From contig NIVC01003083.1 of NCBI GenBank assembly GCA_002269645.1, forward strand, positions 56,808-120,807: a stretch of 64,000 bases of DNA, read 5' to 3'. Shown here piece by piece: positions 6,231 to 60,200 of the stretch. The notes beneath the pieces were generated by a model. It saw only the letters and a list, made by a program, of their open reading frames with translations, was not told the DNA's origin and ran no database searches. The DNA comes from Macrostomum lignano. Lineage: Eukaryota. The position numbers and the translations under genes were made by a program. How positions within the stretch are numbered: the first letter of the stretch is position 1; each line of letters begins with the position of its first letter.

Positions 6231-8482
6231 GCAAGGTTTTCCCTCAGAGAGGTTTTCCCTCAGCGAGGTTTTCCTGCAGCGAGGTTTTCCCTCAGCAAGG
6301 TTTTCCCTCGGCAAGGTTTTAAGGCAGCAAGGTTTTCCCACAGTGAGGTTTTCCCACAGTGAGGTTTTCCCACAGTGAGGTTTACCCTCAGCAAGGTTTT
6401 CCCTCAGTCAGGTTTTCCCTCAGTCAGGTTTTCCCTCAGTCAGGTTTTCCCTCAGTGAGGTTTTCCCACAGTGAGGTTTTCCCACAGTGAGGTTTTCCCA
6501 CAGTGAGGTTTTCCCTCAGTGAGGTTTTCCCACAGTGAGGTTTTCCCTCAGTCAGGTTTTCCCTCAGTCAGGTTTTCCCTCAGTCAGGTTTTCCCTCAGT
6601 CAGGTTTTCCCTCAGTGAGGTTTTCCCTCAGTGAGGTTTTCCACAGTGAGGTTTTCCCTCAGTGAGGTTTTCCCACAGTGAGGTTTTCCCACAGTGAGGT
6701 TTACCCTCAGTGAGGTTTTCCCACAGTGAGGTTTTCCCACAGTGAGGTTTTCCCACAGTGAGGTTTTCCCACAGTGAGGTTTTTCCACAGTGAGGTTTTC
6801 CCTCAGTCAGGTTTTCCCTCAGTCAGGTTTTCCCTCAGTGAGGTTTTCCCACAGTGAGGTTTTCCCTCAGTGAGGTTTTCCCACAGTGAGGTTTTCCCTC
6901 AGTCAGGTTTTCCCTCAGTCAGGTTTTCCCTCAGTCAGGTTTTCCCTCAGTCAGGTTTTCCCTCAGTGAGGTTTTTTCCACAGTGAGGTTTTCCCTCAGT
7001 GAGGTTTTCCCACAGTGAGGTTTTCCCTCAGTGAGGTTTTCCCTCAGTGAGGTTTTCCACAGTGAGGTTTTCCCTCAGTGAGGTTTTCCCACAGTGAGGT
7101 TTTCCCTCAGTGAGGTTTTCCCACAGTGAGGTTTTCCCTCAGTGAGGTTTTCCCTCAGTGAGGTTTTCCCACAGTGAGGTTTTCCCTCAGTGAGGTTTTC
7201 CCTCAGTCAGGTTTTCCCTCAGTGAGGTTTTCCCTCAGTGAGGTTTTCCCTCAGTCAGGTTTTCCCTCAGTGAGGTTTTTTCCACAGTGAGGTTTTCCCT
7301 CAGTGAGGTTTTCCCACAGTGAGGTTTTCCCTCAGTGAGGTTTTCCCTCAGTGAGGTTTTCCACAGTGAGGTTTTCCCTCAGTGAGGTTTTCCCACAGTG
7401 AGGTTTTCCCTCAGTGAGGTTTTCCCACAGTGAGGTTTTCCCTCAGTGAGGTTTTCCCTCAGTGAGGTTTTCCCACAGTGAGGTTTTCCCTCAGTCAGGT
7501 TTTCCCTCAGTCAGGTTTTCCCTCAGTGAGGTTTTCCCTCAGTCAGGTTTTCCCTCAGTCAGGTTTTCCCTCAGTGAGGTTTTTTCCACAGTGAGGTTTT
7601 CCCTCAGTGAGGTTTTCCCACAGTGAGGTTTTCCCTCAGTGAGGTTTTCCCTCAGTGAGGTTTTCCACAGTGAGGTTTTCCCTCAGTGAGGTTTTCCCAC
7701 AGTGAGGTTTTCCCTCAGTGAGGTTTTCCCACAGTGAGGTTTTCCCACAGTGAGGTTTTCCCTCAATGAGGTTTTCCCACAGTGAGGTTTTCCCTCAGTT
7801 AGGTTTTCCCTCAGCAAGGTTTTCCCACTGTGAGGTTTTCCCTCAGTGAGGTTTTCCCACAGTCAGGTTTTCCCTCAGTGAGGTTTACCCTCAGTGAGGT
7901 TTTCCATCAGTGAGGTTTTCCCACAGTGAGGTTTTCCCTCAGTGAGGTTTTCCCACATTGAGGTTTTCCCACAGTGAGGTTTTCCCACAGTGAGGTTTTC
8001 CCTCAGTGAGGTTTTCCCACAGTGAGGTTTTCCCACAGTGAGGTTTTCCCTCAGTGAGGTTTTCCCACAGTGAGGTTTTCCCTCAGTGACGTTTTCCCTC
8101 AGTGAGGTTTTCCCACAGTGAGGTTTTCCCACAGTGAGGTTTTCCCACAGTGAGGTTTTCCCTCAGTGAGGTTTTCCCACAGTGAGGTTTTCCCACAGTG
8201 AGGTTTTCCCACAGTGAGGTTTTCCCACAGTGAGGTTTTCCCACAGTGAGGTTTTCCCTCAGTGAGGTTTTCCCACAGTGAGGTTTTCCCACAGTGAGGT
8301 TTTCCCACAGTGAGGTTTTCCCTTAGGGAGGTTTTCCCTCAGCGAGGTTTTAAGGCAGCGAGGTTTTCCCACAGTGAGGTTTTCCCTCAGTGAGGTTTTC
8401 CCTCAGTGAGGTTTTCCCACAGTGAGGTTTTCCCTCAGTGAGGTTTTCCTGCAGCGATTTTTTCCTGCAACGAGGTTTTTCC
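6231..8482. repeat. 16-bp satellite array (~140 units), consensus GAGGTTTTCCC(T/A)CAGT
   Basis: Direct reading. Homogeneous core with diverged units at both edges. 304-bp higher-order period at ~6971-7880. Confidence 0.98.
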
Positions 8483-24642: not shown

Positions 24643-25567
24643 CAGGAATGGGCAGACTTTTACTTCAAAAGCCAGATAAAGAATCCAGTATCCAGCTTAT
24701 GTGCGGGCCAGATGAGAGTGGAAAGGAGAAGGAATAGACTATTAGAAGAGAGGAGAGGCGAGAGGGGGATATGAGAAAACATGGAATATAAGAGGAGAGA
24801 AAAGTGTCCTCTGTATTAGCAAAAAGTGGTGAGGAGAGAGCAGAGAAGAAGGGAGGAAGAAGCGAGAGGAGGGGAGAAAGGAGGGAGAGGAAAGAGTAAA
24901 GGTGAGAAGAGGGGAGAGATGAGACAGAGGATCGATGAGAGGAGAGTAGAGAAGAGTGAGAAGAGAGTAGAGATGAGAGAGCAGAAAGAAGATGACAGAG
25001 GGTCAAGAGGAGAGGAGAGATTAGAGAGGAGAGAGTAGAAAGGATAGAAAAGAGAGGAGATAAGAGGGGGAGAGAAGGGGTGAGAAGAGAAGAGATAGAG
25101 ATAAGAGAGTGGTGTAAGAAGATGGGAGAAAGGAGAGATGAGAGAGTAAAGGGATGAGGAGGAGAGAGGAAAAAGATGAGATTGTAGAGATGAGACAGAT
25201 GAAAGAAGAGATGAGAGATGAAAAAGGTGAGAGAAGAGTGCAGAGAGACGAGAGAAGACAATAGAGGAGAGAGAGAGTATAGAAGAGGGAAGAGAAAAGA
25301 AGAGAGGAGTAAGGAAAGAGAGGAGTCAGAAGAGATGAAAGAGAAGAGTACAGAGGAGATAAGTGAGAGAACGTATAAGAGAGTAAAGATGACAGATGAG
25401 AGAGCAGATGAACAGACGAGAGATGGGAGAGTACAGAGAACAGAGGAGAGATAAGAGAGAAGAGATTACAGAGACTAGAGGAGAGAGGAGAGACAGGGAG
25501 AGAGAAGAGGAAATAGGAGAATGAAGAGGGGAGAGAGTAGAGAGGAGAAGAGAGATTGGAGAGAGAT

Positions 25568-25628
<61 letters not shown>

Positions 25629-26101
25629 CAGAGCAGATAGAAACGAGAAGAGATAAGAGAGAAAAGATAAAAGAAGAGAAAGGAGAGATGAAAGAGCAGA
25701 CGAGAGAGAAGAGAGGTGAGGGAAGAGACGAGCGACGAGGGGAGAGAGAAGATATAAAACAAGAAAAGAGATGAGAGGAAAGAGAGATAGGAAAGAGGTG
25801 AGGGAAGAGACGAGAGAAGAGGGGAGAGAGGAAAGAGTAGAGAGGAGAGATGAGAGAGTAGAGGAGAGAGTTAAGAGAAGAGAGAAAAGAATAGAGAGGA
25901 GAAGGATAGAGGATAGGGAAGAGAGATGAAACAGAAGAGAGATGAGGGAAGATACAAGAGAAGAGAGGAGAGAGGAGAGAAGAGAGAGGAGAGAGGAGAG
26001 ACGAGGGATGAGAGAGAAGAAAGAAAAGAGACGATAGAAATTTTAAAGGATCCAAGGGACATAGGGAGAGTCAGGGAGAGGCCAGAGTTTGCCAATACAT
26101 G
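24643..26101. mobile_element. hAT-like MITE containing a ~1.3-kb GA-rich tract (24720-26040)
   Basis: Degenerate TIRs CAGGAATGGGCAGACT..AGTTTGCCAATACATG. Flanks TTTCCAAG/TTTTAGAG match 5/8. Internal GATAAAGAA.CC and GGGCCAGAT motifs are shared with the MITE at 29381. Confidence 0.5.
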
Positions 26102-37611: not shown

Positions 37612-39915
37612 TCACAGCGGCTCTTCGAGTTTCTGGAAAATCTCCTTGCGCATCTGCTTCATTCCAAAGTTGGCCTCGAAAAACCGGCACAGATCCATAA
37701 CGGTTTGACCATTATCATTCACGTCCTTGATGCACTCCGGTCCAAGCTGCTTTATCAGCCAGCGGAGGGTTTGCCGGCTCACCTTATTCAGAGCAGCCAC
37801 GTGCACCGTTTTCATTCCGTTGCGACCCCTCACTTTGCGAAAAATTTTACATCGCTCAGCTTCTCCTTGATTAACTGCAAGGTTTCCTTAGTTTGAAACT
37901 CGGCTGCCGCGTGGATCACGGTGTCGCCTCTCCTGTCACTGTACAGAAGGCACTCGGGGCCCCAGCTCGTTGATCATCCACTTAAGCGGTAGTGGACTCA
38001 CTCTCTGAGTTGTCGCGGCAGAATGCACAACAGTGATTTTGTTGTATTCACGGGTCTTGAAACATTCGACGCCCTTTGTCTTCTCCTTAAGGAAGTGCAG
38101 AACGTTCACATCCTGAAACTCGGCTGCTATATGAAGAGGAGTGCTGTCGTCTGAGTCTCTGTCCATCAGACACTTGACTCCGAGCTCGTTCACTAGCCAC
38201 TTGAACGCTAAACTGCTTTTCTTGTTCATTGCAGCGCAGTGAACAGCAGTCATCCTGTCTCTGCCCCTGAGGCTGAAGCACTCGGAACCGTTCATCTTCT
38301 TTTTGATAAACTTCAGTGTTTCATCTGTCTGAAACTCCGCTGCGTCGTGAATAGGCGTGTTTCCTTCAACGTCCTGACTTTTAAGATACTCTGTCCCAAG
38401 TTCGTTCACCAGCCACTTCAACGCCGAGTCACCGGTCTTATTTTGAGCTGCACTGTTTGTAATGCTGTTGCGGAAACGACCTTTTAGTCTGAAGTGCTTC
38501 ATGCCGCCCAGGGTATCCTTGATGAACTGCATGCACTCTGCCGATTGGTAATAAGCAGCTATATGGATGACTGTGTCGCCTTGATAATCCTTATTTAACA
38601 GGCATTCTGGACCAAGCTCTTTCACTAGCCACGTGAGTGCAGAAAAAGTTGATGTGTTGAAGGCAGCACAATGCACCGGTGTCATTCTTTCTCCCTGTTT
38701 AAAACAACTGACGCCGTTCATCTTCCTTTTGATAAACTCCATGGTCTCCGCATTTTGTGAGCCGGCAGCATTGTGAATAACCGTATTGCCCTCCTGATCC
38801 TTTACCTCCAAGCACTTCTGTCCAAGTTCATCCACCAACCAATGAAGAGCCGAGTTGCTAATCTTGTTCAGTGCAGCGTAATGCACCACAGTAGAAAACT
38901 TCATGCCTGTTTCGGTGAAACACTCGACTCCGGTCATTTTCTCCTTGATGAACCTCTTGCAGTCAGCCGTTTGGAAGGCGGCTGCAATGTGGACCACAGT
39001 GTTTCCATCCCCGTCCGTGTCCGTGAGTACTTGATGTCCGAGCTCGTTAACTAACCATTCGAGCGAAGAGCTGCCGAACTCGTTCTTGGCGGCCGAGTGG
39101 ACAACAGTCATCCTGTTGAAGCCTTTGGTTTTAAAACACTTCGCATTGTTTGTCTTCGCTTTAATTAGCTGCAGCACTTCGGCTCTCTGGCGCTCGGCAG
39201 CGATGTGCATGGCCGTGTACTAATCTTCGTCCTTCTCGCTGAGGCAAGCCGCTTCCAGCTCCTCCACAAGCCAGTTAAAAGCCGACAGACCCTGGCGGTT
39301 CATGGCGGCGCAGTGAAGGGCCGTCCGGTTACGGAATCCCTTCTGCTTAAAGCACTCGGTATTGTTACCCATGTTCTGCTTGATGATCTGCATCGACTCA
39401 GCAGTCTGTTGTTGTGACGCCAGGTGTACGGGCGAGTTTCCACTAGCGTCAATGTCGTCAAGACAACCTGGTCCGAGGTTGTTGAGCAGCCATTCAAGAG
39501 ATGAGCTTGTGTGCCGATTCCTCGCGGCACAGTGTGCCACAGTGCCACCTCTGCTGTCCTTGTTGGGCGACTTGAAGCAGAGAGTCTCTTGCATTGCGTC
39601 CTTGATGAGCTGCATGGACTCGGAGCTCTGATGATGTTCGGCTACCATGTGTACAATGGAGTCGCCGTTGCTGTCTCTGAGCAGGAAGGCATCAATGCCG
39701 ATGCAATCAGCCAGAACTCGCAGAGCGGCGAGCCCGAGGCTGTCGCGAGCAGCCGCGAACACGACGTCTCTGGCTGTGGAATCGCTCGACTCGCCGATTC
39801 GATCAGCCACCTCCTGCGTCAGACGCTCAATCTCAGAATCGTCGCCGCACTGGATGGCGGTCTTCAGAGCTGAGTAGAGCTGCTCCGCCGAGTGCTGGTT
39901 TAGAGTATGGGCCAT
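37612..39915 (-). pseudogene. Intronless ankyrin-like repeat gene (~765 codons) with an in-frame TAG and a +1 frameshift
   Basis: ORFs 39220-39915 and 37936-39210 are in one frame, separated by TAG (39220-39222). An extra base in GGGGCCCC (37956-37963) shifts the frame; the corrected frame runs ELGPECLLYSDRRGDTVIHAAA.. to the stop at 37612. Recurrent GxTxxHxAA motifs. A splice acceptor precedes the ATG. Confidence 0.8.
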
Positions 39916-45665: not shown

Positions 45666-46877
45666 CTAATTTCTCGGCGTCTTCCAGATGATGAACACGT
45701 TCCTCTTGTACCTAAACACGTACGAGGTTTCAGGCTCGAAACCAAAGTAGCACCAGAACTGGCCGCGAATAGCTAACACGTGCCAGACTCGATCGAATTG
45801 CTTGTCAGCCTCGAGCTTCACCCACTTTGGGACTTCCTGCAATGCAGAAAGTTTCTCGATTTCAGAGTTTTTTGTGTGATCTAATCTTCTTCCTTGTGTG
45901 TTTCCATTTTCCTACCTTCAAGCTAGAGTGCTTCTCCAACGCTTCAATGCAGAGCCTGGCAATATCGATCTGTCGCTCCTCCGACATGTCGCCAGCAATG
46001 TACTCCACACCTTCAGGCATGCCGGTTGCCTTGGCTCGAAGACGAGTCTCTTCCATCCTGTTTCATATAGCCAAATTAATGCGACAACGTGCTAGTTCTT
46101 ATTATATGTTATTATAAGCGTATTTAATGTAGTATACATGTAATGAGAGCACCATATGTACGTTATACATGTATGCGCCAGCAAAATTCTACTTTTAACA
46201 TTTTTATTTGTTCAGACGACCATCCCGATTAAATAGAGCCCGAACTAATTTTTATTCGATTCCTGTCCAGAGCAATGTACGTCAATGAGTGGCTTTTGAA
46301 TGAGCAACATCATCAAGCGATTTTTGTGGAATGTCGAGGCATCACATGACTGAGCACCCTTGTGGTCAGGCACAAACCTCAATTGGGACCTTGTGGTCAG
46401 GCAGCAACCTCAATCGGGACCTTGTGGTTAGGCACCAACCTCAATCGGGATCTCGTGGTCAGAGACCAACCTCTTCCGGGACCGGGATGATGTAGTTTAT
46501 CTATATTTAAATTTTCATTAAATGTTTCTCAAACAAGACAAAAAGAGAATTAGCTCAAAAAGCCTCGAGGTCACAATCTTTTAACGCACATTTCCTTCTC
46601 ATTGAGTCCCAGAACTTCGCAGTACTCTTCGAGTTCAATAGTACCCGAATTGTCCTGATCAAATATGGCCATCCATTTCTGTAAAGCAACAGAAGACCAA
46701 GTGCTTAGTATTGAATACTTCAAAAATGCAATTTCACGTCTCATTATAGTTGCACCGCACCTTCACAAACGCTTCTTCGTAGTTATTCTTGCGCATATAG
46801 ACCGCCAAATCTTCCGCGTTGATTGATCCCTTGGCTTCTAGATCGATGGAGTACCAAGCCTCTTTAAATACTTCCAT
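45666..46877 (-). CDS. TAL: Tegument-allergen-like (TAL) protein: EF-hand pair + dynein-light-chain-like domain, 172 aa
   Basis: Exons 46877-46761, 46678-46590, 46057-45916, 45836-45666 are GT-AG and phase-consistent (519 nt). Protein: MEVFKEAWYSIDLEAKGSINAEDLAVYMRKNNYEEAFVKKWMAIFDQDNSGTIELEEYCEVLGLNEKEMMEETRLRAKATGMPEGVEYIAGDMSEERQIDIARLCIEALEKHSSLKEVPKWVKLEADKQFDRVWHVLAIRGQFWCYFGFEPETSYVFRYKRNVFIIWKTPRN. Confidence 0.93.
46358..46480. repeat. ~31-bp tandem repeat (4 copies) in TAL intron 2
   Basis: GACCTTGTGGTCAGGCA..AACCTCAAT.GG repeated. Confidence 0.85.
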
Positions 46878-48211
46878 TGCTTTTAGTGCCGTGTGGAGAG
46901 CTTCTGTGAAACAAAATCAAGTGGGCAGTTTGTGTGTGTCTGCTTTTCGATGCTTTGCCTAGTCTTTTGTACAGTTGTTACCATCTGTATGCATCTAGCT
47001 CTTCTTGCACAAAGTGTGCGTGTTCACTGAGAGATCTTCATTTTTGTGAGCAGGCACTCGCGCTAAGAAGAATTGAAATATTAAAAAAATATAAAGTGAA
47101 GGCATTTCGTCTCGACACACTGTTCATTTTGCTGACTACCGACGAGCATTGTGCGTTTACTCTGCAGTACAAACTATAATGGCCGCGCAAGGGTAGAAAT
47201 CTTTCTAATTTGCGTCAGTCAAATTTTAACTGTCTCAGTAGCATTCGATGCAGAGTAAGTCAGTTGTGTCCTTACAAGATCACTGATAATGAGGCCGTCA
47301 TCTTCTATAAGACCAAAAAACCTGTCAAACACATTTCATTCTAAAGTGCACAGACTAAAAAAGTATGCTAGAATGTCAAGGTGCATTTGCGAAAATCTTG
47401 AAGAAAAATTTTTTTTTGGGAATCAATTTTCCTCTACTCAAACGTTATTATTAATCTCGCTAAATCAATTCTCAATTCTTTTCTTAGCGAGGATTTATCC
47501 TAACAAAAATAGAATAAAGAAAAAGTTGCGTAGTTGCGGACCCGGCGACAGTGGTGGCGCCGCTCTTGGCATACCAATCAGACTTTAAAGCCTATTCTGC
47601 ACTCAGTAGCACAGCAGTTGATTAATCTTCCACTTCTTTCATTCTGTCTAATCCGCTTAGGAGTCGATGTTTCTTATAGAGGAGAAATCCTTAAAAGGCA
47701 AAATACTTAGCTGCAACAGGTGCATGGAAGAACGCAGTCGAGGATCAGTTAGGATTAAAGACGGTGCAACACGTGCAGCTAAGACGGTGGATTCTGCCTA
47801 AGCTGCAAGTTGCTGAGCTCAGCATGCAATCTGCTATCGGCAGAAAGGGGGCGAATCAGCGGAGGAAGGGGGCGGGACACGTCAAAAGTTAGGGATTTTA
47901 TCCTGCTGCTACCATTCCTCTCTAGCATTATAACTTCTGCGCCAGTGTCTCAACCAACTGAATTCACCAGACAGTGACGAAGAAATTTTCGGCTCCTAAG
48001 TTGAACACCCCGATTTCAAATTTCAGGCTCCGTTCTGCATCCGATGGACTTCGATTGGATCTTGCAATCGCTGAGTGGCTCGCTGAGCAAAATGCCCAGC
48101 CTCCAATATTCTCCCATGGCCCACTTTGCGCTAGATCAGTACACTGCATGGTCCTATGGTATAGCCTTCACACACTTACTGTCACACATTTTTATTCTTT
48201 TAATTGTGAAG

Positions 48212-51200
48212 GTGCGCGTGACTTGATTGCGCCAAAATCAAAATGGACCGCCTACTGCAACTCGGACAAGGACCCAAGCGATGGTGACAACGAGAACATC
48301 AACTTTGCTCGAGTGGTAAGCTCAGGCTTATTGGTTGTGTTGATGTCTCTTGCTGAACACACAAGCGCTGGGATAGGCAGATAATAAAACGCAAATACAC
48401 TCACATAGACGGACAGACACTAGCACAGATGGACAGACACTAGCACAGACGGACAGACACGTAGCACAGACGGACAGACACTAGCACAGACGGATAGACA
48501 CTAGCACAGAGGGACAGACACTAGCACAGACGGACAGACACTAGCACAGAGGGACAGACACTAGCACAGAGGGACAGACACTAGCACAGAGAGACAGACA
48601 CTAGCACAGAGGGACAGACACTAGCACAGACGGACAGACACCATCACAGAGGGACAGACACTAACACAGACGGACAGACACTAGCACAGACAGACAGACA
48701 CCATCACAGACGGACAGAAACTAACACAGACGGACAGACACTAGCACAGACGGACAGACACTAGCACAGAGGGACAGACACAGCACAGACGGACAGACAC
48801 TAGCACAGAGGGACAGACACAGCACAGACGGACAGACACTAGCACAGAGGGACAGACACAGCACAGACGGACAGACACTAGCACAGAGGGACAGACACTA
48901 GCACAGAGGGACAGACACAGCACAGACGGACAGACACTAGCACAGAGGGACAGACACTAGCACAGAGGGACAGACACTAGCACAGAGGGACAGACACAGC
49001 ACAGACGGACAGACACTAGCACAGAGGGACAGACACTAGCACAGAGGGACAGACACAGCACAGAGGGACAGACACTAGCACAGAGGGACAGACACAGCAC
49101 AGACGGACAGACATTAACACAGACGGACAGACACTATCACAGAGGGACAGAGCCGTCCATACCGTCCCATTGTAGGTATGCAGCGAAATCTGCAACTCTC
49201 CAATCGACTGGAAATGCCGAGTAGCCGGCACCGGCCTGTCAGCCTCAGCCACTGGCCAGAACTTCTCCACCCCCTGCTCTCGAGAGGGCATCGTGTGCGA
49301 CAAGTCGCAGAACAAAGCCGCCGGTTGCAGCGACTACGAAGTGTCGTACCTTTGCCCAGCTGGTAAGTGATGTCAAATAATAGCATGTATGCAATAACTT
49401 AAAACTGAAGAAATCTCAGAAATATTATTTACCAACTTAAGCACCAGCGTTGAGTTTGAATTAAAAAAACACGGGATGATTACTTCGACGGATTGGATGT
49501 CTCGGCGTTTCTAGTCGACTAGCCCAACAAGTTATCAATTTCGCCATTTATAGAGGTCCGGCATCTTTAAATAGATAACAGAGTGACTGAAAAGCTGTTT
49601 AAAAGATCATGTCTTAAGGTAGCTGAGCATCCTGTAATTGACTCATTTCCAGACATCGACGAGTGCGCCCTGAAGCTGCACAATTGCGACCCGAACGCCC
49701 AGTGCATCAACACGCCCGGAAGTTACAAATGCCAGTGCAAAACCGGCTACTTTGGCGACGGCTTCAACTGTCGCACCGGAGCCGCCTGCAGCGCATTCGG
49801 CAACGTCCACGTGGTAACCTTCGACGGAGCGCATCAGGTTGGCGGCTCGCGCTGCGACTTCCAGCTGGCCGCCAACTGCAACGCCACCGCTGGAAGCAAG
49901 TACGCCTTCAGCATCGATATTCAACAAGATCTGATCGGCGGTGCCAAAGTCTTTGTTGCCGGCGTTCTTGTTCGGGTGTACGACCTCACCATCATGGCGC
50001 ACAATGAGCACGGAGTTACAGTGAGTGCAACGGCAACTCTTTACAGGTGTTAGACCACTTAGCATTCCATGCAAAACTCCACACCTGAAAATAACAAAAT
50101 CAAGAACCGTTTCAAAACCTGTGTTTTATTGCTTAGTAGTAAAAATGCAACCAGTGCTGCAACGCAAGGACACAGGACAAGATGAGTCCATGAGAATTGC
50201 CCGCAAACGAATTGCCCGTCGAGATTTGCGGCAGTGCAATTTGCCCGCAATTCTTTTCTCCTGCAGTGCATTTAATCATACGGCAGATTTTGTCTGCATT
50301 ACCCCCGCCCCTAATGCTAAGTAAGTCTTTAAAAAGAGATTTAGGGGACAAAGCAGCATGGCATATGAATTAATTATTAGCTCACTGATGTAGCCCTGCA
50401 TCTATATAAAAATCAAAACCCACAAGTATGCATTTGATATACAGTTACCATCAAAAAGTTTTAATCGGGTAAATCTCTTTATTAAGACTTAATTAAGCAT
50501 TGAGGGGGATTTGCACTGCGGCCTAATCTCCTACGGGAAATTCTCGTGCTTCCGGACAAGATGTCACAGTTTCGTAATGGCATAGTAACTGCTTGACAAC
50601 TAAATAGCTTGATTGTTCGCGGGGAGCTTTTCCAACTGATAGTCGACCCGCAGTCAGTAAGGAGGAAACAAGACGTGCCCATTTCGCTGACACCTGAAGA
50701 CGCATAAGCGCACACGGATGCTTAAAATCAGGCATACACCTGGTGTACAGCGGCACTTCATTTCTTATCGTAGGGCATGTACTCACTCTGTGCCTTTGGG
50801 ATAGAATTGGGCGAACAGCCCTAGAGACAAAATACCAACATTCTTCACAAACAATTCATTTATTCCAGGTAAACGGAATGCCCATCACGCCCAGCCTCAA
50901 CACCTACTCTGGCAATTTGGCCGGCCATCCGAACAGCTCCGTGACCATCACCTACATGTGGAACGACATCGTAATCACCACGGACTACGGCTTGGAAGTT
51001 TCCTACGACATGCGCCGCTACCTGGCAACCGTGATCTCCCCCCAGCTGGCCGGCATTGAACCGTGCGGCCTCTGCGGCAACTCCGACGGCCATCAGGCGA
51101 ACGATTTCACGCCAAAAGGCGCCAACACGACGAGCTCGGATAAGGCGGCGGTGTACGCCTCCTGGATGACTGCCAATCAGTCCAATTCCAAGTAAGCTGA

Positions 51201-54200
51201 ACTTGACGCTAAGTGTATTTAGAAAATCGTTTTACTAGTAGTCAATACGCTACAAAAAGTGATTAAGGGTTTTATAAACTTCTTTTTTCTGACTTAAATT
51301 TTACTAATGCATGATTAAATAATACTTTGTTGTCAGTCAACTGCCGCCTGAGGTATTTAAAAGGTTGGTGCCAGCGCCAGCAGAGGCTTTAGCACCAGGG
51401 GCTTTAGCACCAGGGGCTTTAGCACCAGGGGCTTTAGCACCAGGGGCTTTAGCACCAGGGGCGCCAGCACCAGGGGCTTTAGCACCAGGGGCTTTAGCAC
51501 CAGGGGCTTTAGCACCAGGGGCGCCAGCACCAGAGGCGCCAGCACCAGAGGCGCCAGCACCAGGGGCGCCAGCACCAGGGGCGCCAGCACCAGAGGCGCC
51601 AGCACCAGAGGCGCCAGCACCAGGGGCGCCAGCACCAGGGGCGCCAGCACCAGGGGCGCCAGCACCAGGGGCGCCAGCACCAGGGGCGCCAGCACCAGGG
51701 GCGCCAGCACCAGGGGCGCCAGCACCAGGGGCGCCAGCACCAGGGGCGCCAGCACCAGGGGCTTTAGCACCAGGGGCGCCAGCACCAGGGGCGCCAGCAC
51801 CAGGGGCTTTAGCACCAGGGGCGCCAGCACCAGGGGCGCCAGCACCAGGGGCGCCAGCACCAGGGGCTTTAGCACCAGGGGCTTTAGCACCAGGGGCTTT
51901 AGCACCAGAGGCGCCAGCACCAGAGGCGCCAGCACCAGGGGCGCCAGCACCAGGGGCGCCAGCACCAGGGGCGCCAGCACCAGGGGCGCCAGCACCAGGG
52001 GCGCCAGCACCAGGGGCGCCAGCACCAGGGGCGCCAGCACCAGGGGCGCCAGCACCAGGGGCGCCAGCACCAGGGGCGCCAGCACAAGGGGCGCTTGTAC
52101 CAGGGGCGCTAAAGATCCTGCAAGAAGCGCAATATCATTTTTTCACTTTATTGGGGGGGGGGGTGGTGGGGCACAGCCCACCTTGCCACCTTCCTGACCA
52201 CGCCCAATAATTCTCACATTTACCAAGATCTTAAATTATTATCACCAACAACGACAGCTCTTTATCCCCGCCTGAATTGCAGCTGCAAAAAGGAGGAAAT
52301 TTCCCGCCCAGTCGAAAGCAGCAGCGTCTCCTCAGCCTCCGTGATGGTCGTCTGCAATGCTATCCTGTCCAACTACGCGTTTTCAACTTACCTGGCTGAC
52401 GCGACGCTTCGCGGAGTCTTCAACGACGCCTGCCACAGCGACATGGCCGCTCCCTTTGACAACCTGCAGCTGTGCCAGCTGACTACAGCATTCTACAAGG
52501 TGCTCAGCGCCCGCGGCCTGCTCAGCTCTGCCCAGCTGTTTCCACCCGGACTGTGCCAGGGTAAGCAGTGCAAATAAACGTTACACTTTCTACTTGAGAC
52601 AGTAGTGCGGTTAGAACGTTTAATAGATTATGTTAATGATATGTTAGGCTGGATGTTACAGAAGGGTTGTAAGATTTTATTTAACGGTTTATTTATATTT
52701 AAAAGGTATTTCCAAAGTGGTCATAGCCTTGAATCGGTTTCTGAGTTTTAAGCGTCAGAATTGCAATTGCGTTTGGCATCCTGGGTCCGAATTTAAAATG
52801 CCAAATGCCAAAATGCCAAGTTTACAGATTATTCGAATTTGACAATTGATAAACGTTTAGAAATTTCAATATAATCCGAATTGTTCCAAAATTATTATTA
52901 CTTTAAGTGAAATGGGAATTACAGAAAATATAGAATTCAAATGAATTGGCACCCAGTCTGGAAAAATCAGGCTGCCTACTCGTATTTGGCATCCGGGATC
53001 AACATTCAGGATTCCAGGATAACAAAATTAAAGTCGATGTGTTGACACATGACACAAGCTGTGAAACAAAACTCGACCCGAACTGCTCCATTCAGAGACT
53101 TCCACCTGTCAGGCCAACGAACAGTTGGTAGTCGACGCACGACCCTGCGAGCCGAACGACTGTCCGAACATCAACCAGGGCATCGGCACCGGCTCCCACT
53201 GCGGCGTGCAGCGCCGTCAGCCAGCCTGCCATTGCCAGCCGAGCTATCGTCGAAGCGGCAACGTCTGCGTCCGAGCGAACCAATGCGGCTGCACAGCGGC
53301 CAAACGAGACGAAGCCGGCGGTTTCTACAAGGCCAAGGGCCAGGTTTGGTACTCGCAGGCTTGCGCTAAGAAGCACGTTTGCAACGGCGCTCGCGGAATT
53401 GACTCGGTTGGCAACGCGTGCAAAAACAACACCAAATGCGTGCAGCTGCCGGATGGCGCCGCCTTCTGCGACTGTGCCGAAGGCTTCGCCGGGCCCGCCT
53501 GCGAGGATATTGACGAGTGTGCCAAGTGAGAGGCCAATGATGCGATTTCTGTCCGCTCAAAGTTTTTCTTCGTCTTTTTCTGCAATATCATTTTTCGGCT
53601 TTTCATTTTTACAGTTAGCTTTTTTTGGATTTTAGCGTTAGTCTTTTTGTCTCCACATCCGTCACTAAGTCCGCCTCCACGTCCGTCTCTACGTCCGTCT
53701 CCAAGTCCATCTCCAAGTCCATCTCCAAGTCCGTCTCCAAGCGCAGGCCGTCTCCACGTCCGTCTCCACGTCCGTCTCTACGTCCGTCTGCATGTCCGTC
53801 TCTAAGTCCTTCTCCATTTTTGTCTTGATTCTGTGTTCATTTTCCCCCATCGACATTCAGAAGTTTATTTCACTGCTACTTCTTACTTACTACCGCATTT
53901 CGCCATTGTCATCTTTTGTTTTTCATCTTCCAGTCGAATTTAACTGAAAAACCCTCAACCCATCTGCCAGAGGCAATCACGCCTGTCACGCTAAAGCCGT
54001 GTGCGTCAACACACCTGGCGGTTATCAGTGCCGCTGTCAGTCTGGTTACCAAGGCAACGGCTACAACTGCAGCGACGTAGACGAATGCTCGGCCACCGTC
54101 TCGCCGTGCAGCGCCAACGCAATTTGCCGCAACCTACCCGGAAGTTACCAGTGCGCCTGCGTGTCGCCCTACGTTGGCGACGGTAAAACCTGCTCCGTAC

Positions 54201-57200: not shown

Positions 57201-60200
57201 TTTTTTAGCCGTGTCATCTACGCCGGACAGACCGGGCCGAAGAGCTACTACACTGGCCTGTTTCTGGCTGCCAATGCGACCAACTTCACCAACTCTGACG
57301 GCAGCAAGATCGCTTATTACAACTGGAAGGGCGGCGCCGCGCCAGCCAATGCTAGTCAAGGCCGCTGCACTCAGATTGCCGACCCGGCGGAAGGCTTCAC
57401 CGTTGTTGGCTGCTCATCCGACGCTTGGGCCGTGTGCGAATTCGGTTAGCGATGCTTTATTGGTTCATTTTTGGATTTGGCTTGAGCAAGGGTCTGTTTC
57501 ATATGGAGTATATAGATTAAGGGGCTGTTTTGTTTTATTTTCTGGGTAGGATTGTTAGAGTAAATTGTCTGGTAGATGTGTGTTTTAGTTTGAGTAGATT
57601 GTATGGGTTGACTGAGGTTTAGTTTGAGTAGGTTGTAAGAGTTGACTGGGGTTTAGTTTGAGTAGGTTGTAAGAGTTGACTGGGGTTTAGTTTGAGTAGG
57701 TTGTAAGAGTTGACTGAGGTTTAGTTTGAGTAGGTTGTAAGAGTTGACTGGGGTTTAGTTTGAGTAGGTTGTAAGAGTTGACTGGAGTTTAGTTTGAGTA
57801 GGTTGTAAGAGTAGGTTGTAAGAGTTGACTGGGGTTTAGTTTGAGTAGGTTGTAAGAGTTGACTGGAGTTTAGTTTGAGTAGGTTGTAAGAGTAGGTTGT
57901 AAGAGTTGACTGGGGTTTAGTTTGAGTAGGTTGTAAGAGTAGGTTGTAAGAGTTGACTGGGGTTTAGTTTGAGTAGGTTGTAAGAGTAGGTTGTAAGAGT
58001 TGACTGGGGTTTAGTTTGAGTAGGTTGTAAGAGTTGACTGAGGTTTAGTTTGAGTAGGTTGTAAGAGTAGGTTGTAAGAGTTTACTGGGGTTTAGTTTGA
58101 GTAGGTTGTAAGAGTTGACTGAGGTTTAGTTTGAGTAGGTTGTAAGAGTAGGTTGTAAGAGTTGACTGGGGTTTAGTTTGAGTAGGTTGTAAGAGTTGAC
58201 TGAGGTTTAGTTTGAGTAGGTTGTTAGAATTGACTGAGGTTTAGTTTGAGTAGGTTGTAAGAGTTGACTGAGGTTTAGTTTGAGTAGGTTGTAAGAGTTG
58301 ACTGGGGTTTAGTTTGAGTAGGTTGTAAGAGTTGACTGAGGTTTAGTTTGAGTAGGTTGTTAGAGTTGACTGAGGTTTAGTTTGAGTAGGTTGTAAGAGT
58401 TGACTGAGGTTTAGTTTGAGTAGGTTGTTAGAGTTGACTGAGGTTTAGTTTGAGTAGGTTGTAAGAGTAGGTTGTAAGAGTAGGTTGTAAGAGTTGACTG
58501 AGGTTTAGTTTGAGTAGGTTGTAAGAGTTGACTGAGGTTTAGTTTGAGTAGGTTGTAAGAGTTGACTGGGGTTTAGTTTGAGTAGGTTGTAAGAGTTGAC
58601 TGAGGTTTAGTTTGAGTAGGTTGTAAGAGTTGACTGAGGTTTAGTTTGAGTAGGTTGTTAGAGTTGACTGAGGTTTAGTTTGAGTAGGTTGTAAGAGTTG
58701 ACTGAGGTTTAGTTTGAGTAGGTTGTTAGAGTTGACTGAGGTTTAGTTTGAGTAGGTTGTAAGAGTTGACTGAGGTTTAGTTTGAGTAGGTTGTTAGAGT
58801 TGACTGAGGTTTAGTTTGAGTAGCTTGTCGGGGGTAAAGCTTCAAGTTAGGACAAATTATTATGTAACTTTGCTAGCTAGGTTTCTGGTAGATTAATAGA
58901 AGTGCGTGCTAGAGATACATTAAAAAGGTCTTCTAAAAACCGCGTATTCCGATTTTCGACTCAAATAAATGGCCAGCACATGTGAAACGATGCAACGCAG
59001 ACAACCCTTCGCGCAATTGCAGAGAACACGCCCTGTCTGAAGCACTCCGACTGCGCAGCCAATGGCGAATGCTTCCTCGGGCAGTGCCGCTGCAAGAAGG
59101 GTTTCTATGGCGACGGTCGGCGATCGTGCGTTGGTGAGTGAATTGGAATAAATACCTGATTCTGAGTTACGGATTGTAATTGTTTTATTAGTCTAAACAT
59201 TTGAAACCCTAACGCGAAACCAATCAGACATTGATGAGTGCGAGATCGATGGCGTCTGTCAGTCGCATTCGACCTGCTCCAATCTGATTGGCGGCTACAA
59301 ATGCGACTGCGACGCTGGTTATCAGCTGAACGCCGAAGGTCGCTGCCAAGGTGAGTTGCTATGGGTCCTCTCCATCCTGCAGACCACAGGGCGAAAACTT
59401 GACTCCGCTAACTCTCAAGGCTATGAAGAGAACTCATTTTGATATCTCTAGCCAAAAGCAAGCACTTGGTATGTAATTAGTAAGCACGTCTATCGTGGCG
59501 CGTCAGCGGCACGAATTCAAAATTACTTTTTGTAAAGAAAATTGTTGACGGAAAAGACATTCACAGACATTCGAGGTTGTCTAACACTAGTGCTGATCTT
59601 CTTTCAAATTTTCTGATGTAGCTTTTAGCCGGAACCAGATGGTAAAGATTTTTAGTATATTTGAAAAATTCAAATAACAATTTTTTGTTTAAAAATTATC
59701 TTTAATTTGACAGAAAGCACAAAAATTGGTCAAGATACTGAGGTGCAAGAGCAAACATTCCTGGAACTTTTGGGACACCGCTCGTAGATTTAAGTCGCTC
59801 GTTAAGCATGGGATAGAAGTTGTTGACTTGTTGAAAGGGGTTGCTTTTTACAGGTGCAGATCAGCCCTGGTTGAGCTCTGTCGCTGAGTAGAAGAGGGTT
59901 GATGGGTCCATTATTGGACCGGCAATAAATTTAGATCGCCAGCCGTCATCTTCATTCTCAGAGTCAAATCAAGCCTCTATACTGCCAGCGAAATATCGTG
60001 CAGAGCTCAAATTTTCGGACTATGCTAAACTATGCTAACATCCCCTTTTTATCGTTGGTACTATATTCCCAAACAGTCCATCTTTCTAAATAGAAATACT
60101 ACGGTTGCTACTTGAATCAGTATTTTTACTCGACTATACGAGTTCTACACAATAATTTTAACAGACATTCGATACTGTGTCTCAAACTCCGACTGTCTCC

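What the first reader, a model, noticed from the sequence alone, without database searches (positions are those of the whole stretch)
45666..46877. Intact TAL (EF-hand + DLC-like) gene in what looks like a free-living flatworm
Seen: four phase-consistent exons give 172 aa with a degenerate EF-hand 1, a canonical EF-hand 2 loop (DQDNSGTIELEE) and a DLC-like C-terminus ending WKTP. The ORF track shows only a fragment of it. Established: this fusion defines the TAL family (Sm22.6/Sm21.7/Sm20.8, FhCaBP), usually described as a parasitic-flatworm tegument family. Inference: if the host is free-living, the family predates the neodermis and had an ancestral epidermal or ciliary role.
Basis: partly seen in the sequence, partly recalled or inferred. 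Interest (0 to 1): 0.75.

Follow-up and report, generated by a model that had tools for sequence, protein, structure and literature searches.

The report
TAL-type calcium-binding gene in Macrostomum

Summary
Four GT..AG exons on the minus strand (46877-45666) give a 172-aa protein. It is 100% identical to GenBank BOX15_Mlig014838g1 of Macrostomum lignano, and the window is identical to contig NIVC01003083.1, so the host is a free-living flatworm. Pfam finds an EF-hand pair and a Dynein_light domain, both above the curated cut-offs. Only EF-hand 2 is canonical. The protein aligns end to end with Sm21.7, a 22.6-like schistosome protein and FhCaBP4. Its AlphaFold model (pLDDT 94) has FhCaBP4 as best PDB match. 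Introns 1 and 2 (phases 0 and 2, around an 89-nt exon) sit at the same positions in two schistosome TAL genes (an Sm21.7 orthologue and a 22.6-like gene) and a third schistosome fusion gene, so the fusion is inherited, not convergent. M. lignano has at least eight such genes. The window gene belongs to a Macrostomum-specific clade outside the classical tegumental clade. Papers from 2012-2025 call the family parasite- or trematode-only, and this gene contradicts that. The gene is already in databases as a 'hypothetical protein'. The epidermal or ciliary role is untested. Likely mechanism, by inference: a cytosolic homodimeric Ca2+ sensor and adaptor. Interest is moderate.

The parts
45666..46877 (-). 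Whole gene from ATG to TAG: 4 exons, 3 introns, 172-aa product (20.4 kDa, pI 5.0, no hydrophobic segment)
   Evidence: Identical to NCBI model BOX15_Mlig014838g1.
46761..46877 (-). Exon 1 (aa 1-39): helix, EF-hand 1 loop, helix. Ends in phase 0, one codon before the conserved Trp.
46809..46844 (-). EF-hand 1 loop DLEAKGSINAED, degenerate (Glu at loop position 3, Lys at 5, Asp at 12). It fails the PROSITE PS00018 pattern.
46679..46760 (-). Intron 1 (82 nt, phase 0). Its position is shared with M. lignano paralogues and with four trematode genes.
46590..46678 (-). Exon 2 (89 nt, aa 40 to part of codon 69), which carries EF-hand 2. The same 89-nt length and the same 0/2 phases occur in three schistosome genes.
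46625..46660 (-). EF-hand 2 loop DQDNSGTIELEE, canonical. It matches PS00018 and is the predicted single Ca2+ site.
46058..46589 (-). Intron 2 (532 nt, phase 2). Contains a 31-nt tandem repeat (3.7 copies) at 46358-46473.
45916..46057 (-). Exon 3 (aa 69-116): the linker with the conserved 'MP.GV..I..DM' motif and the first half of the DLC-like domain.
45837..45915 (-). Intron 3 (79 nt, phase 0, after aa 116). Shared by several Macrostomum paralogues and absent from the four trematode genes examined.
45666..45836 (-). Exon 4 (aa 117-172 plus the stop): the second half of the DLC-like domain, ending IIWKTPRN*.
45678..45999 (-). Dynein-light-chain-like domain (aa 89-169, interrupted by intron 3). 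The model superposes on LC8 structures at about 1.2 A over 85 residues.

Best explanation
[quoted passage not shown] It belongs to the flatworm EF-hand/dynein-light-chain-like fusion family, known as TAL proteins in schistosomes and CaBPs in Fasciola. The fusion gene was present in the common ancestor of Macrostomorpha and the parasitic Neodermata. The window gene is one of at least eight M. lignano members and belongs to a Macrostomum-specific expansion, not to the classical tegumental-antigen clade.

Likely mechanism, inferred from solved and biochemically studied relatives: a soluble cytosolic protein of about 20 kDa that forms a homodimer through its LC8-like C-terminal domain (swapped beta-strands held by main-chain hydrogen bonds). 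It binds one Ca2+ per chain at EF-hand 2; EF-hand 1 is degenerate, as in SmTAL2/Sm21.7. [quoted passage not shown] The tissue and the partners in M. lignano are unknown.
For: Shown here.
- Gene model: four GT..AG exons with consistent phases.
- Identity: 100% match to BOX15_Mlig014838g1, and the window is identical to contig NIVC01003083.1.
- Domains: both Pfam domains score above their cut-offs.
- Similarity to TALs: end-to-end BLASTP alignments to Sm21.7 (29% identity, 5e-31) and a 22.6-like protein (2e-28). hhalign of the Macrostomum clade against the classical TAL profile gives probability 99.95%, E 2e-38, over 172 columns.
- Solved structures: the best PDB sequence match is full-length FhCaBP4, 9voa, at 5e-24 for the single protein and 5e-34 for the profile. 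LC8 and calmodulin score only 1e-7 to 1e-11.
- Model: AlphaFold2 pLDDT 94.4. The best Foldseek match is 9voa over 176 columns, and the DLC domain superposes on LC8 at 1.2 A.
- DLC-domain tree: the DLC domains of all fusion proteins are monophyletic against LC8 in 300 of 300 bootstraps.
- Introns: intron 1 (phase 0) and intron 2 (phase 2) flank an 89-nt exon at the same positions in the window gene, in M. lignano paralogues, and in an Sm21.7 orthologue, a 22.6-like gene and a 202-aa schistosome member.
- Ca2+ site: EF-hand 2 matches PS00018 and EF-hand 1 does not.
- Solubility: no hydrophobic segment.
- Constraint: three genomic copies of paralogue Mlig012489 differ at about six exon sites, and all encode the identical protein.

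From the literature: SmTAL1-3 form dimers, and SmTAL2, with one good EF-hand, binds Ca2+ reversibly (PMC4300400). The FhCaBP4 and CsTAL3 structures show DLC-mediated dimers and a Ca2+-induced conformational change (PMC12347358, PMC5431922). SmTAL3 was reported to associate with dynein (cited in PMC3317908).
Against: - I could not obtain transcript, protein or localisation data for this gene.
- The two genomic copies are almost identical (one substitution in 1212 nt), so this locus gives no dN/dS signal.
- Deep nodes of the family tree are unresolved (bootstrap below 35%).
- The trees are neighbour-joining only, and species labels could be obtained for only about 40 sequences.
- Several residues that line the LC8 peptide groove differ in the alignment (interpreted from my own knowledge of LC8). 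Partner binding may therefore differ from LC8, and the mechanism is inferred, not shown.
- pTM is 0.65, so the orientation between the two domains in the model is uncertain.
Confidence: 0.85

Rival explanations
1. Same family, different mechanism. The protein acts as a Ca2+-independent LC8-like dimerisation hub or dynein light chain, for example in epidermal cilia or sperm, and the EF-hand pair is only structural.
For: SmTAL3 binds no Ca2+ although it has two EF-hand-like motifs (PMC4300400). The DLC domain superposes on axonemal and cytoplasmic LC8 at about 1.2 A. The Macrostomum proteins keep the Trp-His pair found in LC8, where classical TALs have Trp-Gln. EF-hand 1 is degenerate.
Against: EF-hand 2 is a perfect PS00018 match. 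It is conserved in paralogues P0002, P0003, P0009 and P0023 and in the environmental relatives, which argues for retained Ca2+ binding. Groove residues differ from LC8.
Confidence: 0.2
2. The locus is an unexpressed or decaying duplicate in a recently duplicated genome, intact only because it is young.
For: M. lignano carries several near-identical copies of many loci. Two copies of this gene differ by one base, so selection cannot be measured here. No transcript was retrieved for it.
Against: The ORF is complete and all splice sites are canonical. Family motifs and the EF-hand 2 loop are intact. The protein is only 58% identical to its nearest paralogue yet keeps the full architecture, which implies long-term maintenance. 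Copies of a sister paralogue differ only at synonymous sites.
Confidence: 0.07
3. Convergent, independent fusion of an EF-hand pair and an LC8-like domain in Macrostomum, not homologous to the TAL fusion.
For: Both domains are common and could fuse more than once. The deep phylogeny is unresolved.
Against: The alignment runs end to end, including the linker motif and the C-terminal W[KR]TP. Two intron positions, their phases and the exact 89-nt exon are shared with schistosome TAL genes. The DLC domains form one clade against LC8.
Confidence: 0.03
4. Parasite DNA contaminating the assembly, or recent horizontal transfer from a parasite.
For: Family members appear under implausible organism names elsewhere (a euglenid and a salmon louse), so contamination does occur in this family.
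Against: The gene lies inside a 120.8-kb M. lignano contig, with a homoeologous copy on a 131.9-kb contig and the same neighbours. Seven further paralogues lie on M. lignano contigs of up to 700 kb. The protein is at most 37% identical to any labelled parasite member.
Confidence: 0.01

Closest known systems
SmTAL2 / Sm21.7 of Schistosoma mansoni (UniProt P32070)
   Same: Same architecture and size (184 aa against 172 aa), collinear over the full length (29% identity, E 5e-31). Same EF-hand status: EF-hand 1 degenerate, EF-hand 2 good (PMC4300400). In its S. haematobium orthologue, intron 1 (phase 0) and intron 2 (phase 2) flank the same 89-nt exon.
   Different: Sm21.7 belongs to the classical trematode tegumental clade (99% bootstrap), which excludes the window protein. 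It has Trp-Gln where the window protein has Trp-His, 'SYW..FSHEP' where the window protein has 'QFWCYFGFEP', and a longer linker. It lacks intron 3. It is a tegument antigen of a parasite.
FhCaBP4 of Fasciola hepatica (PDB 9voa), FhCaBP2 DLC-like domain (5fwz, 5fx0) and CsTAL3 (5x2d, 5x2e)
   Same: These are the best sequence and fold matches in the PDB. The dimer-interface segments align without gaps: FhCaBP4 QTLV and WMKFS against window HVLA and WCYFG (alignment, PMC12347358).
   Different: Both EF-hands of FhCaBP4 match the canonical pattern. Sequence identity is 30-32%. The inter-domain orientation differs from the model (rmsd 12 A over 176 columns), which may reflect model uncertainty or the apo crystal form.
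LC8 / DYNLL dynein light chain (Pfam PF01221)
   Same: The fold of the C-terminal domain is the same (TM 0.9 normalised to the target, 1.2 A). The Trp-His pair is retained.
   Different: LC8 is a stand-alone protein of about 89 aa with no EF-hands. Identity is only 30%, E 2e-12. The window protein has a one-residue insertion and different residues in the beta-3 groove region, and ends WKTP where LC8 ends FKSG. It falls outside the LC8 clade.
Calmodulin and centrin-type EF-hand pairs
   Same: The N-terminal 70 residues match EF-hand_7 and calmodulin or centrin lobes.
   Different: There is one EF-hand pair with a single canonical loop, fused to a DLC-like domain. The scores are much weaker than to TAL/CaBP proteins (1e-5 to 1e-8 against 5e-24).

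Membership tests
TAL / CaBP family (EF-hand + DLC-like fusion; criteria of Fitzsimmons et al. 2012, PMC3317908) | N-terminal pair of EF-hand motifs | tested here: met
   EF-hand_7 covers aa 2-61, 38.1 bits against a cut-off of 30. EF-hand_1 covers aa 38-62. The model shows helix-loop-helix twice.
TAL / CaBP family (EF-hand + DLC-like fusion; criteria of Fitzsimmons et al. 2012, PMC3317908) | C-terminal dynein-light-chain (DLC-1/LC8-like) domain in the same polypeptide | tested here: met
   Dynein_light covers aa 89-169, 50.6 bits against a cut-off of 29.1. The fold matches FhCaBP2, CsTAL3 and LC8.
TAL / CaBP family (EF-hand + DLC-like fusion; criteria of Fitzsimmons et al. 2012, PMC3317908) | Overall sequence similarity to SmTAL1-3 (the paper used BLAST E < 1e-16) | tested here: met
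   Pairwise BLASTP gives 5e-31 to Sm21.7 and 2e-28 to a 22.6-like protein. phmmer gives 5e-24 to FhCaBP4 in a database of 177,635 sequences. hhalign gives 2e-38. Caveat: pairwise E-values are not database E-values, and SmTAL1 and SmTAL3 themselves were not compared.
TAL / CaBP family (EF-hand + DLC-like fusion; criteria of Fitzsimmons et al. 2012, PMC3317908) | Common descent of the fusion gene (shared gene structure). This is my added criterion, not part of the published definition. | tested here: met
   Introns 1 and 2 have the same position and phase, and exon 2 is 89 nt, in the window gene, in M. lignano paralogues and in three schistosome genes.
TAL / CaBP family (EF-hand + DLC-like fusion; criteria of Fitzsimmons et al. 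2012, PMC3317908) | Homodimer through the DLC-like domain; Ca2+ binding | not testable with these tools
   Only predicted. The interface segments align without gaps and the EF-hand 2 loop is canonical. No multimer prediction or biochemistry was possible.
TAL / CaBP family (EF-hand + DLC-like fusion; criteria of Fitzsimmons et al. 2012, PMC3317908) | Tegument localisation and IgE/allergen-like antigenicity (the origin of the name) | not testable with these tools
   M. lignano has a ciliated cellular epidermis and no neodermal tegument (established zoology), and it has no host. Even in schistosomes not all members are tegumental: SmTAL5 in situ signal is in testes (PMC7959349).
Classical tegumental TAL clade (Sm22.6, Sm21.7, FhCaBP1-4, CsTAL) | Groups inside the clade formed by these proteins | tested here: not met
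   The classical clade has 99% bootstrap support and excludes the window protein. The window protein sits in a Macrostomum clade with 72% support.
Canonical LC8/DYNLL dynein light chains | Stand-alone protein of about 89 aa that groups with LC8 | tested here: not met
   The protein has two domains and 172 aa. Its DLC domain groups with the fusion-type domains against LC8 in 100% of bootstraps.

The most novel reading that the evidence does not exclude
The EF-hand/DLC-like fusion family had already split into several lineages in the ancestor of rhabditophoran flatworms. It served a Ca2+-regulated microtubule or dynein function in a ciliated epidermis or in sperm, and some members were later co-opted into the syncytial tegument of parasites. 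M. lignano can be manipulated by RNAi and transgenesis, so it would then be a practical model for finding the function of a family whose role in parasites is still unknown (PMC3317908: 'Their function is not known'). A more remote possibility is that the environmental and 'euglenid' relatives (P0005, P0006, P0100) show the family extends beyond flatworms.
Probability: 0.3. Interest if true: 0.6.

Novelty: new member of a known kind. Interest (0 to 1): 0.4.

Why it matters
TAL/CaBP proteins are major IgE antigens and candidate vaccine or drug targets in schistosomes and liver flukes. Papers repeatedly describe them as 'found only in parasitic flatworms' (PMC4300400) or 'only in trematodes' (PMC12347358), and their cellular function is unknown.

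A multi-gene family with the same fusion and the same introns in a free-living macrostomid corrects that statement. It shows that the fusion did not arise as an adaptation to parasitism or to the neodermal tegument. It also points to a tractable non-parasitic model in which the family's basic cell biology could be studied. The family still has no reported counterpart in mammals (PMC5431922), so the drug-target argument is unaffected.

The gain is incremental. The gene is already in GenBank and UniProt, one paper already calls TALs 'flatworm-specific' (PMC7959349), and a 2012 EST table shows weak hits of a 'Tegumental protein' in Schmidtea and Macrostomum (PMC3510090).

Tried and rejected
1. 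dN/dS between the two genomic copies of the window gene was uninformative: one intronic substitution in 1212 nt. I used three copies of paralogue Mlig012489 instead.
2. The word-indexed homology search with a 57-sequence alignment returned only 10 proteins. It was of little use for labelling, so labels came from cluster look-ups and a second search with classical TALs.
3. The supplementary BLAST table of PMC12058154 (S. mansoni against free-living flatworms) was not held in usable form.
No held paper describes the fusion family in a free-living flatworm. Vichasri-Grams et al. 2006, which may discuss homologues across the phylum, is not held.
5. I found no labelled planarian (Schmidtea, Dugesia) member. 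The databases carry few named planarian proteins, so this is not evidence of absence.
7. There is no second family member in the window, and no Rfam family or tRNA in the window.
8. I considered and rejected contamination, horizontal transfer and convergent fusion (see the rival explanations).

Full report
**1. What is in the sequence**

On the minus strand, four segments are each bounded by GT..AG: 46877-46761, 46678-46590, 46057-45916 and 45836-45666. They join into a 519-nt reading frame of 172 codons plus TAG. The intron phases are 0, 2 and 0.

The product is MEVFKEAWYSIDLEAKGS...IIWKTPRN. It therefore ends WKTPRN, not WKTP. It is 20.4 kDa, has a pI of 5.0 and has no hydrophobic segment, so I take it to be soluble and cytosolic.

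**2. Whose gene it is**

The protein is 100% identical, over its full length, to GenBank 'hypothetical protein BOX15_Mlig014838g1 [Macrostomum lignano]'. The 21.2 kb around the gene are base-for-base identical to contig NIVC01003083.1 of assembly GCA_002269645.1.

A second copy lies on NIVC01000417.1 with the same neighbours. It differs by one intronic base in the gene body, although the 400 nt upstream differ by 26 substitutions and 27 gap columns.

M. lignano is a free-living flatworm of the Macrostomorpha, within Rhabditophora.

**3. Domains and fold**

- Pfam gives Dynein_light at aa 89-169 (E 2.6e-13, 50.6 bits, cut-off 29.1) and EF-hand_7 at aa 2-61 (E 2e-9, 38.1 bits, cut-off 30).
- The EF-hand 2 loop, DQDNSGTIELEE, matches PROSITE PS00018.
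- The EF-hand 1 loop, DLEAKGSINAED, fails the pattern at positions 3 and 5; it also carries Asp rather than Glu at position 12.
- The AlphaFold2 model built on a 57-sequence family alignment has mean pLDDT 94.4 and pTM 0.65.
- Its best Foldseek match in the PDB is full-length FhCaBP4 (9voa, E 1.4e-13, 176 columns). The FhCaBP2 DLC-like domain and many LC8 structures follow, at about 1.2 A over 85 residues.

**4. Is it a TAL-type protein?**

By sequence, the best solved relative is FhCaBP4, at 5e-24 for the single protein and 5e-34 for a profile of the Macrostomum clade. Next come the CsTAL3 and FhCaBP2 domains. LC8 and calmodulin reach only 1e-7 to 1e-11.

BLASTP aligns the protein end to end with Sm21.7 (29% identity, 5e-31), with a 22.6-like schistosome protein (2e-28) and with a Paragonimus member (34%, 2e-40). 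Profile-profile comparison with seven classical TALs gives probability 99.95% over all 172 columns.

In a tree of DLC domains only, all fusion proteins group against canonical LC8 in 300 of 300 bootstraps. The outgroup there is small, four LC8 domains.

**5. Gene structure as independent evidence**

I mapped exons exactly for nine genes.

- The window gene, M. lignano paralogues Mlig012489, Mlig022705 and Mlig010873, an Sm21.7 orthologue (S. haematobium), a 22.6-like gene (S. mekongi) and a 202-aa S. rodhaini member all share two introns. One is a phase-0 intron one codon before the conserved Trp. The other is a phase-2 intron exactly 89 nt later.
- A Fasciola gene model has the same phases with a 140-nt middle exon.
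- The ninth gene, Mlig006259, has lost introns 1 and 2 but keeps intron 3.
- Intron 3 of the window gene (phase 0, after aa 116) is shared by several Macrostomum paralogues. It is absent from Mlig012489 and from the four trematode genes.

Taken with the collinear alignment, which includes the linker and the C-terminal W[KR]TP motif, this makes convergent fusion very unlikely.

**6. Where it sits in the family**

An exhaustive HMM search of 1.84 billion representative proteins found 1023 hits at E < 1e-3 and 184 at E < 1e-10. About 65 of the best 150 listed, together with cluster members fetched earlier, are full-length two-domain proteins. All 57 sampled match Dynein_light, and 45 match EF-hand_7.

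Labelled members come from the following groups:

| Group | Taxa |
|---|---|
| Trematodes | Schistosoma, Trichobilharzia, Heterobilharzia, Fasciola, Fasciolopsis, Paragonimus, Clonorchis, Opisthorchis, Calicophoron, Echinostoma |
| Cestodes | Taenia, Echinococcus, Spirometra, Schistocephalus |
| Monogenean | Cichlidogyrus |
| Free-living | M. lignano |

M. lignano has at least eight distinct genes: Mlig014838, 012489, 022705, 006259, 015343, 010873, 005207 and UniRef A0A1I8GY77. Two of them lie in tandem, 7.6 kb apart.

In a bootstrapped neighbour-joining tree, the window gene falls in a Macrostomum clade (72% support). The classical tegumental clade (Sm21.7, 22.6-like, FhCaBP4 and relatives) has 99% support and excludes it. 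Deeper nodes are unresolved.

The gene is therefore a member of the fusion family in the broad sense, the sense in which SmTAL1-13 were defined. It is not an orthologue of the classical antigens.

**7. Evidence that the family is under constraint in M. lignano**

The window locus itself is uninformative. Three genomic copies of paralogue Mlig012489 encode the identical protein while differing at 3-5 exon positions per pair, about six variable sites in total, all necessarily synonymous. Their introns differ at 3-11 positions in 245 nt.

**8. How it probably works (inferred)**

- SmTAL1-3 are dimers. SmTAL2 has the same pattern of one good and one degenerate EF-hand and binds Ca2+ reversibly (PMC4300400).
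- The FhCaBP4 and CsTAL3 structures show dimerisation through main-chain hydrogen bonds of the DLC-like domain, a hydrophobic groove like that of LC8, and a Ca2+-induced conformational change (PMC12347358, PMC5431922).
- The interface segments of FhCaBP4 (QTLV, WMKFS) align without gaps to HVLA and WCYFG in the window protein.

I therefore propose a cytosolic homodimer with one Ca2+ site per chain that links Ca2+ signals to bound partners.

Residues that line the LC8 peptide groove are partly different (my reading of the alignment, using my own knowledge of LC8). Classic TQT-motif binding should therefore not be assumed.

The Macrostomum proteins and some parasite members keep the Trp-His pair of LC8, where classical TALs have Trp-Gln.

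**9.

'The family predates the neodermis' is supported. The family is present in Macrostomorpha and Neodermata, with shared introns.

'Ancestral epidermal or ciliary role' has no support or contradiction here. Indirect hints from the literature point in several directions:

- SmTAL5 is expressed in testes (PMC7959349).
- SmTAL4 is found in the cercarial tail tegument, and SmTAL6 is expressed mainly in miracidia and sporocysts (PMC3317908).
- SmTAL3 was reported to associate with dynein (cited in PMC3317908).

**10. Novelty**

Papers describe the family as belonging to 'parasitic platyhelminths' (PMC3317908, 2012), as 'found only in parasitic flatworms' (PMC4300400, 2015) and as 'found only in trematodes' (PMC12347358, 2025). 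The cestode and monogenean members found here already contradict the last of these.

One paper calls TALs 'flatworm-specific' (PMC7959349). A 2012 EST comparison lists a 'Tegumental protein' cluster with weak hits in Schmidtea (62.8 bits) and Macrostomum (50.4 bits) (PMC3510090).

None of my ten full-text searches found a paper that describes the fusion family in a free-living flatworm. The library does not hold most subscription journals, and Vichasri-Grams et al. 2006 could not be read.

The gene is already deposited, but without a name. I rate this a new member of a known kind, with a modest and real correction to the literature.

**11. Limits**

- There are no expression data.
- The trees are neighbour-joining only.
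- Many family members could not be labelled.
- No named planarian sequences were available.
- The inter-domain geometry of the model is uncertain.

Noticed in passing
window 45666-46877 against L002 (NIVC01000417.1): The two genomic copies differ by a single base across the whole gene, including 693 nt of introns. The 400 nt just upstream (window 46878-47277) carry 26 substitutions and 27 gap columns, and other flanks range from 0.5 to 11% divergence. This suggests gene conversion or a mosaic of young and old duplicate segments.
   Followed up: partly
window 46358-46473 (intron 2): A 31-nt tandem repeat (3.7 copies, consensus CCTTGTGGTCAGGCACCAACCTCAATCGGGA). It occurs nowhere else in the window, and the exact consensus is not found in the 12 fetched loci.
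   Followed up: yes
P0006 (EukProt EP01003, Olkasia polycarbonata); L003 1-673 (ENA ERZ3792527): A protein filed under a phagotrophic euglenid is 43% identical to the window protein. A close relative on an intronless 673-nt environmental contig is 46% identical. Both share the Macrostomum-type 'GQFWC' motif and group next to the Macrostomum clade. The most likely cause is contamination of the single-cell transcriptome by a small free-living flatworm; a real non-flatworm member is the less likely alternative.
   Followed up: partly
P0046 (GenBank ADD38633.1): 'Tegument antigen [Lepeophtheirus salmonis]', from a salmon-louse EST set, groups with trematode members of the family. It is probably a flatworm contaminant of the louse library, for example a hyperparasitic or fish-parasitic flatworm, rather than a crustacean gene.
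   Followed up: no
L011 10001-12120 and 19771-20576 (NIVC01000042.1): Two family members, Mlig022705 and Mlig010873, lie in tandem 7.6 kb apart on the same strand. Mlig006259 (L012) has lost introns 1 and 2 but keeps intron 3. Mlig012489 (L005) has lost intron 3.
   Followed up: yes
window about 48196 to beyond 60784 (+): A very large gene encoding EGF_CA, cEGF, VWD, Mucin2_WxxW and C-type lectin domains (NCBI model over 1485 aa). Satellites lie within this gene's span (20/59-nt at 48407-49151, 15-nt x48 at 51391-52109, 34/102-nt at 57584-58828). Its 3' end lies 1.3 kb from the start of the TAL-type gene.
   Followed up: partly
window 37936-39915 (-): Two adjacent long ORFs (424 and 231 aa) full of ankyrin repeats, probably exons of one gene.
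   Followed up: partly
window 6234-8449; 24904-26020: A 16-nt satellite with 138 copies (AGGTTTTCCCTCAGTG), and a purine-only GAGGAGA-type tract of about 1.1 kb that causes extreme GC and AT skew.
   Followed up: no
L010 1548-1687 (Fasciola hepatica JXXN02000313.1): The deposited model of a 208-aa 'tegument-associated antigen' has a 140-nt middle exon instead of the 89 nt seen in the other genes, with the same phases. This may be a real insertion or a mis-called splice site.
   Followed up: no
alignment A4, window protein residues 134-135: Macrostomum members and a Paragonimus member keep the Trp-His pair of LC8, where the classical tegumental TALs have Trp-Gln. In LC8 the His lies at the dimer interface (my own knowledge). 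This may mark the classical clade as the derived one.
   Followed up: no
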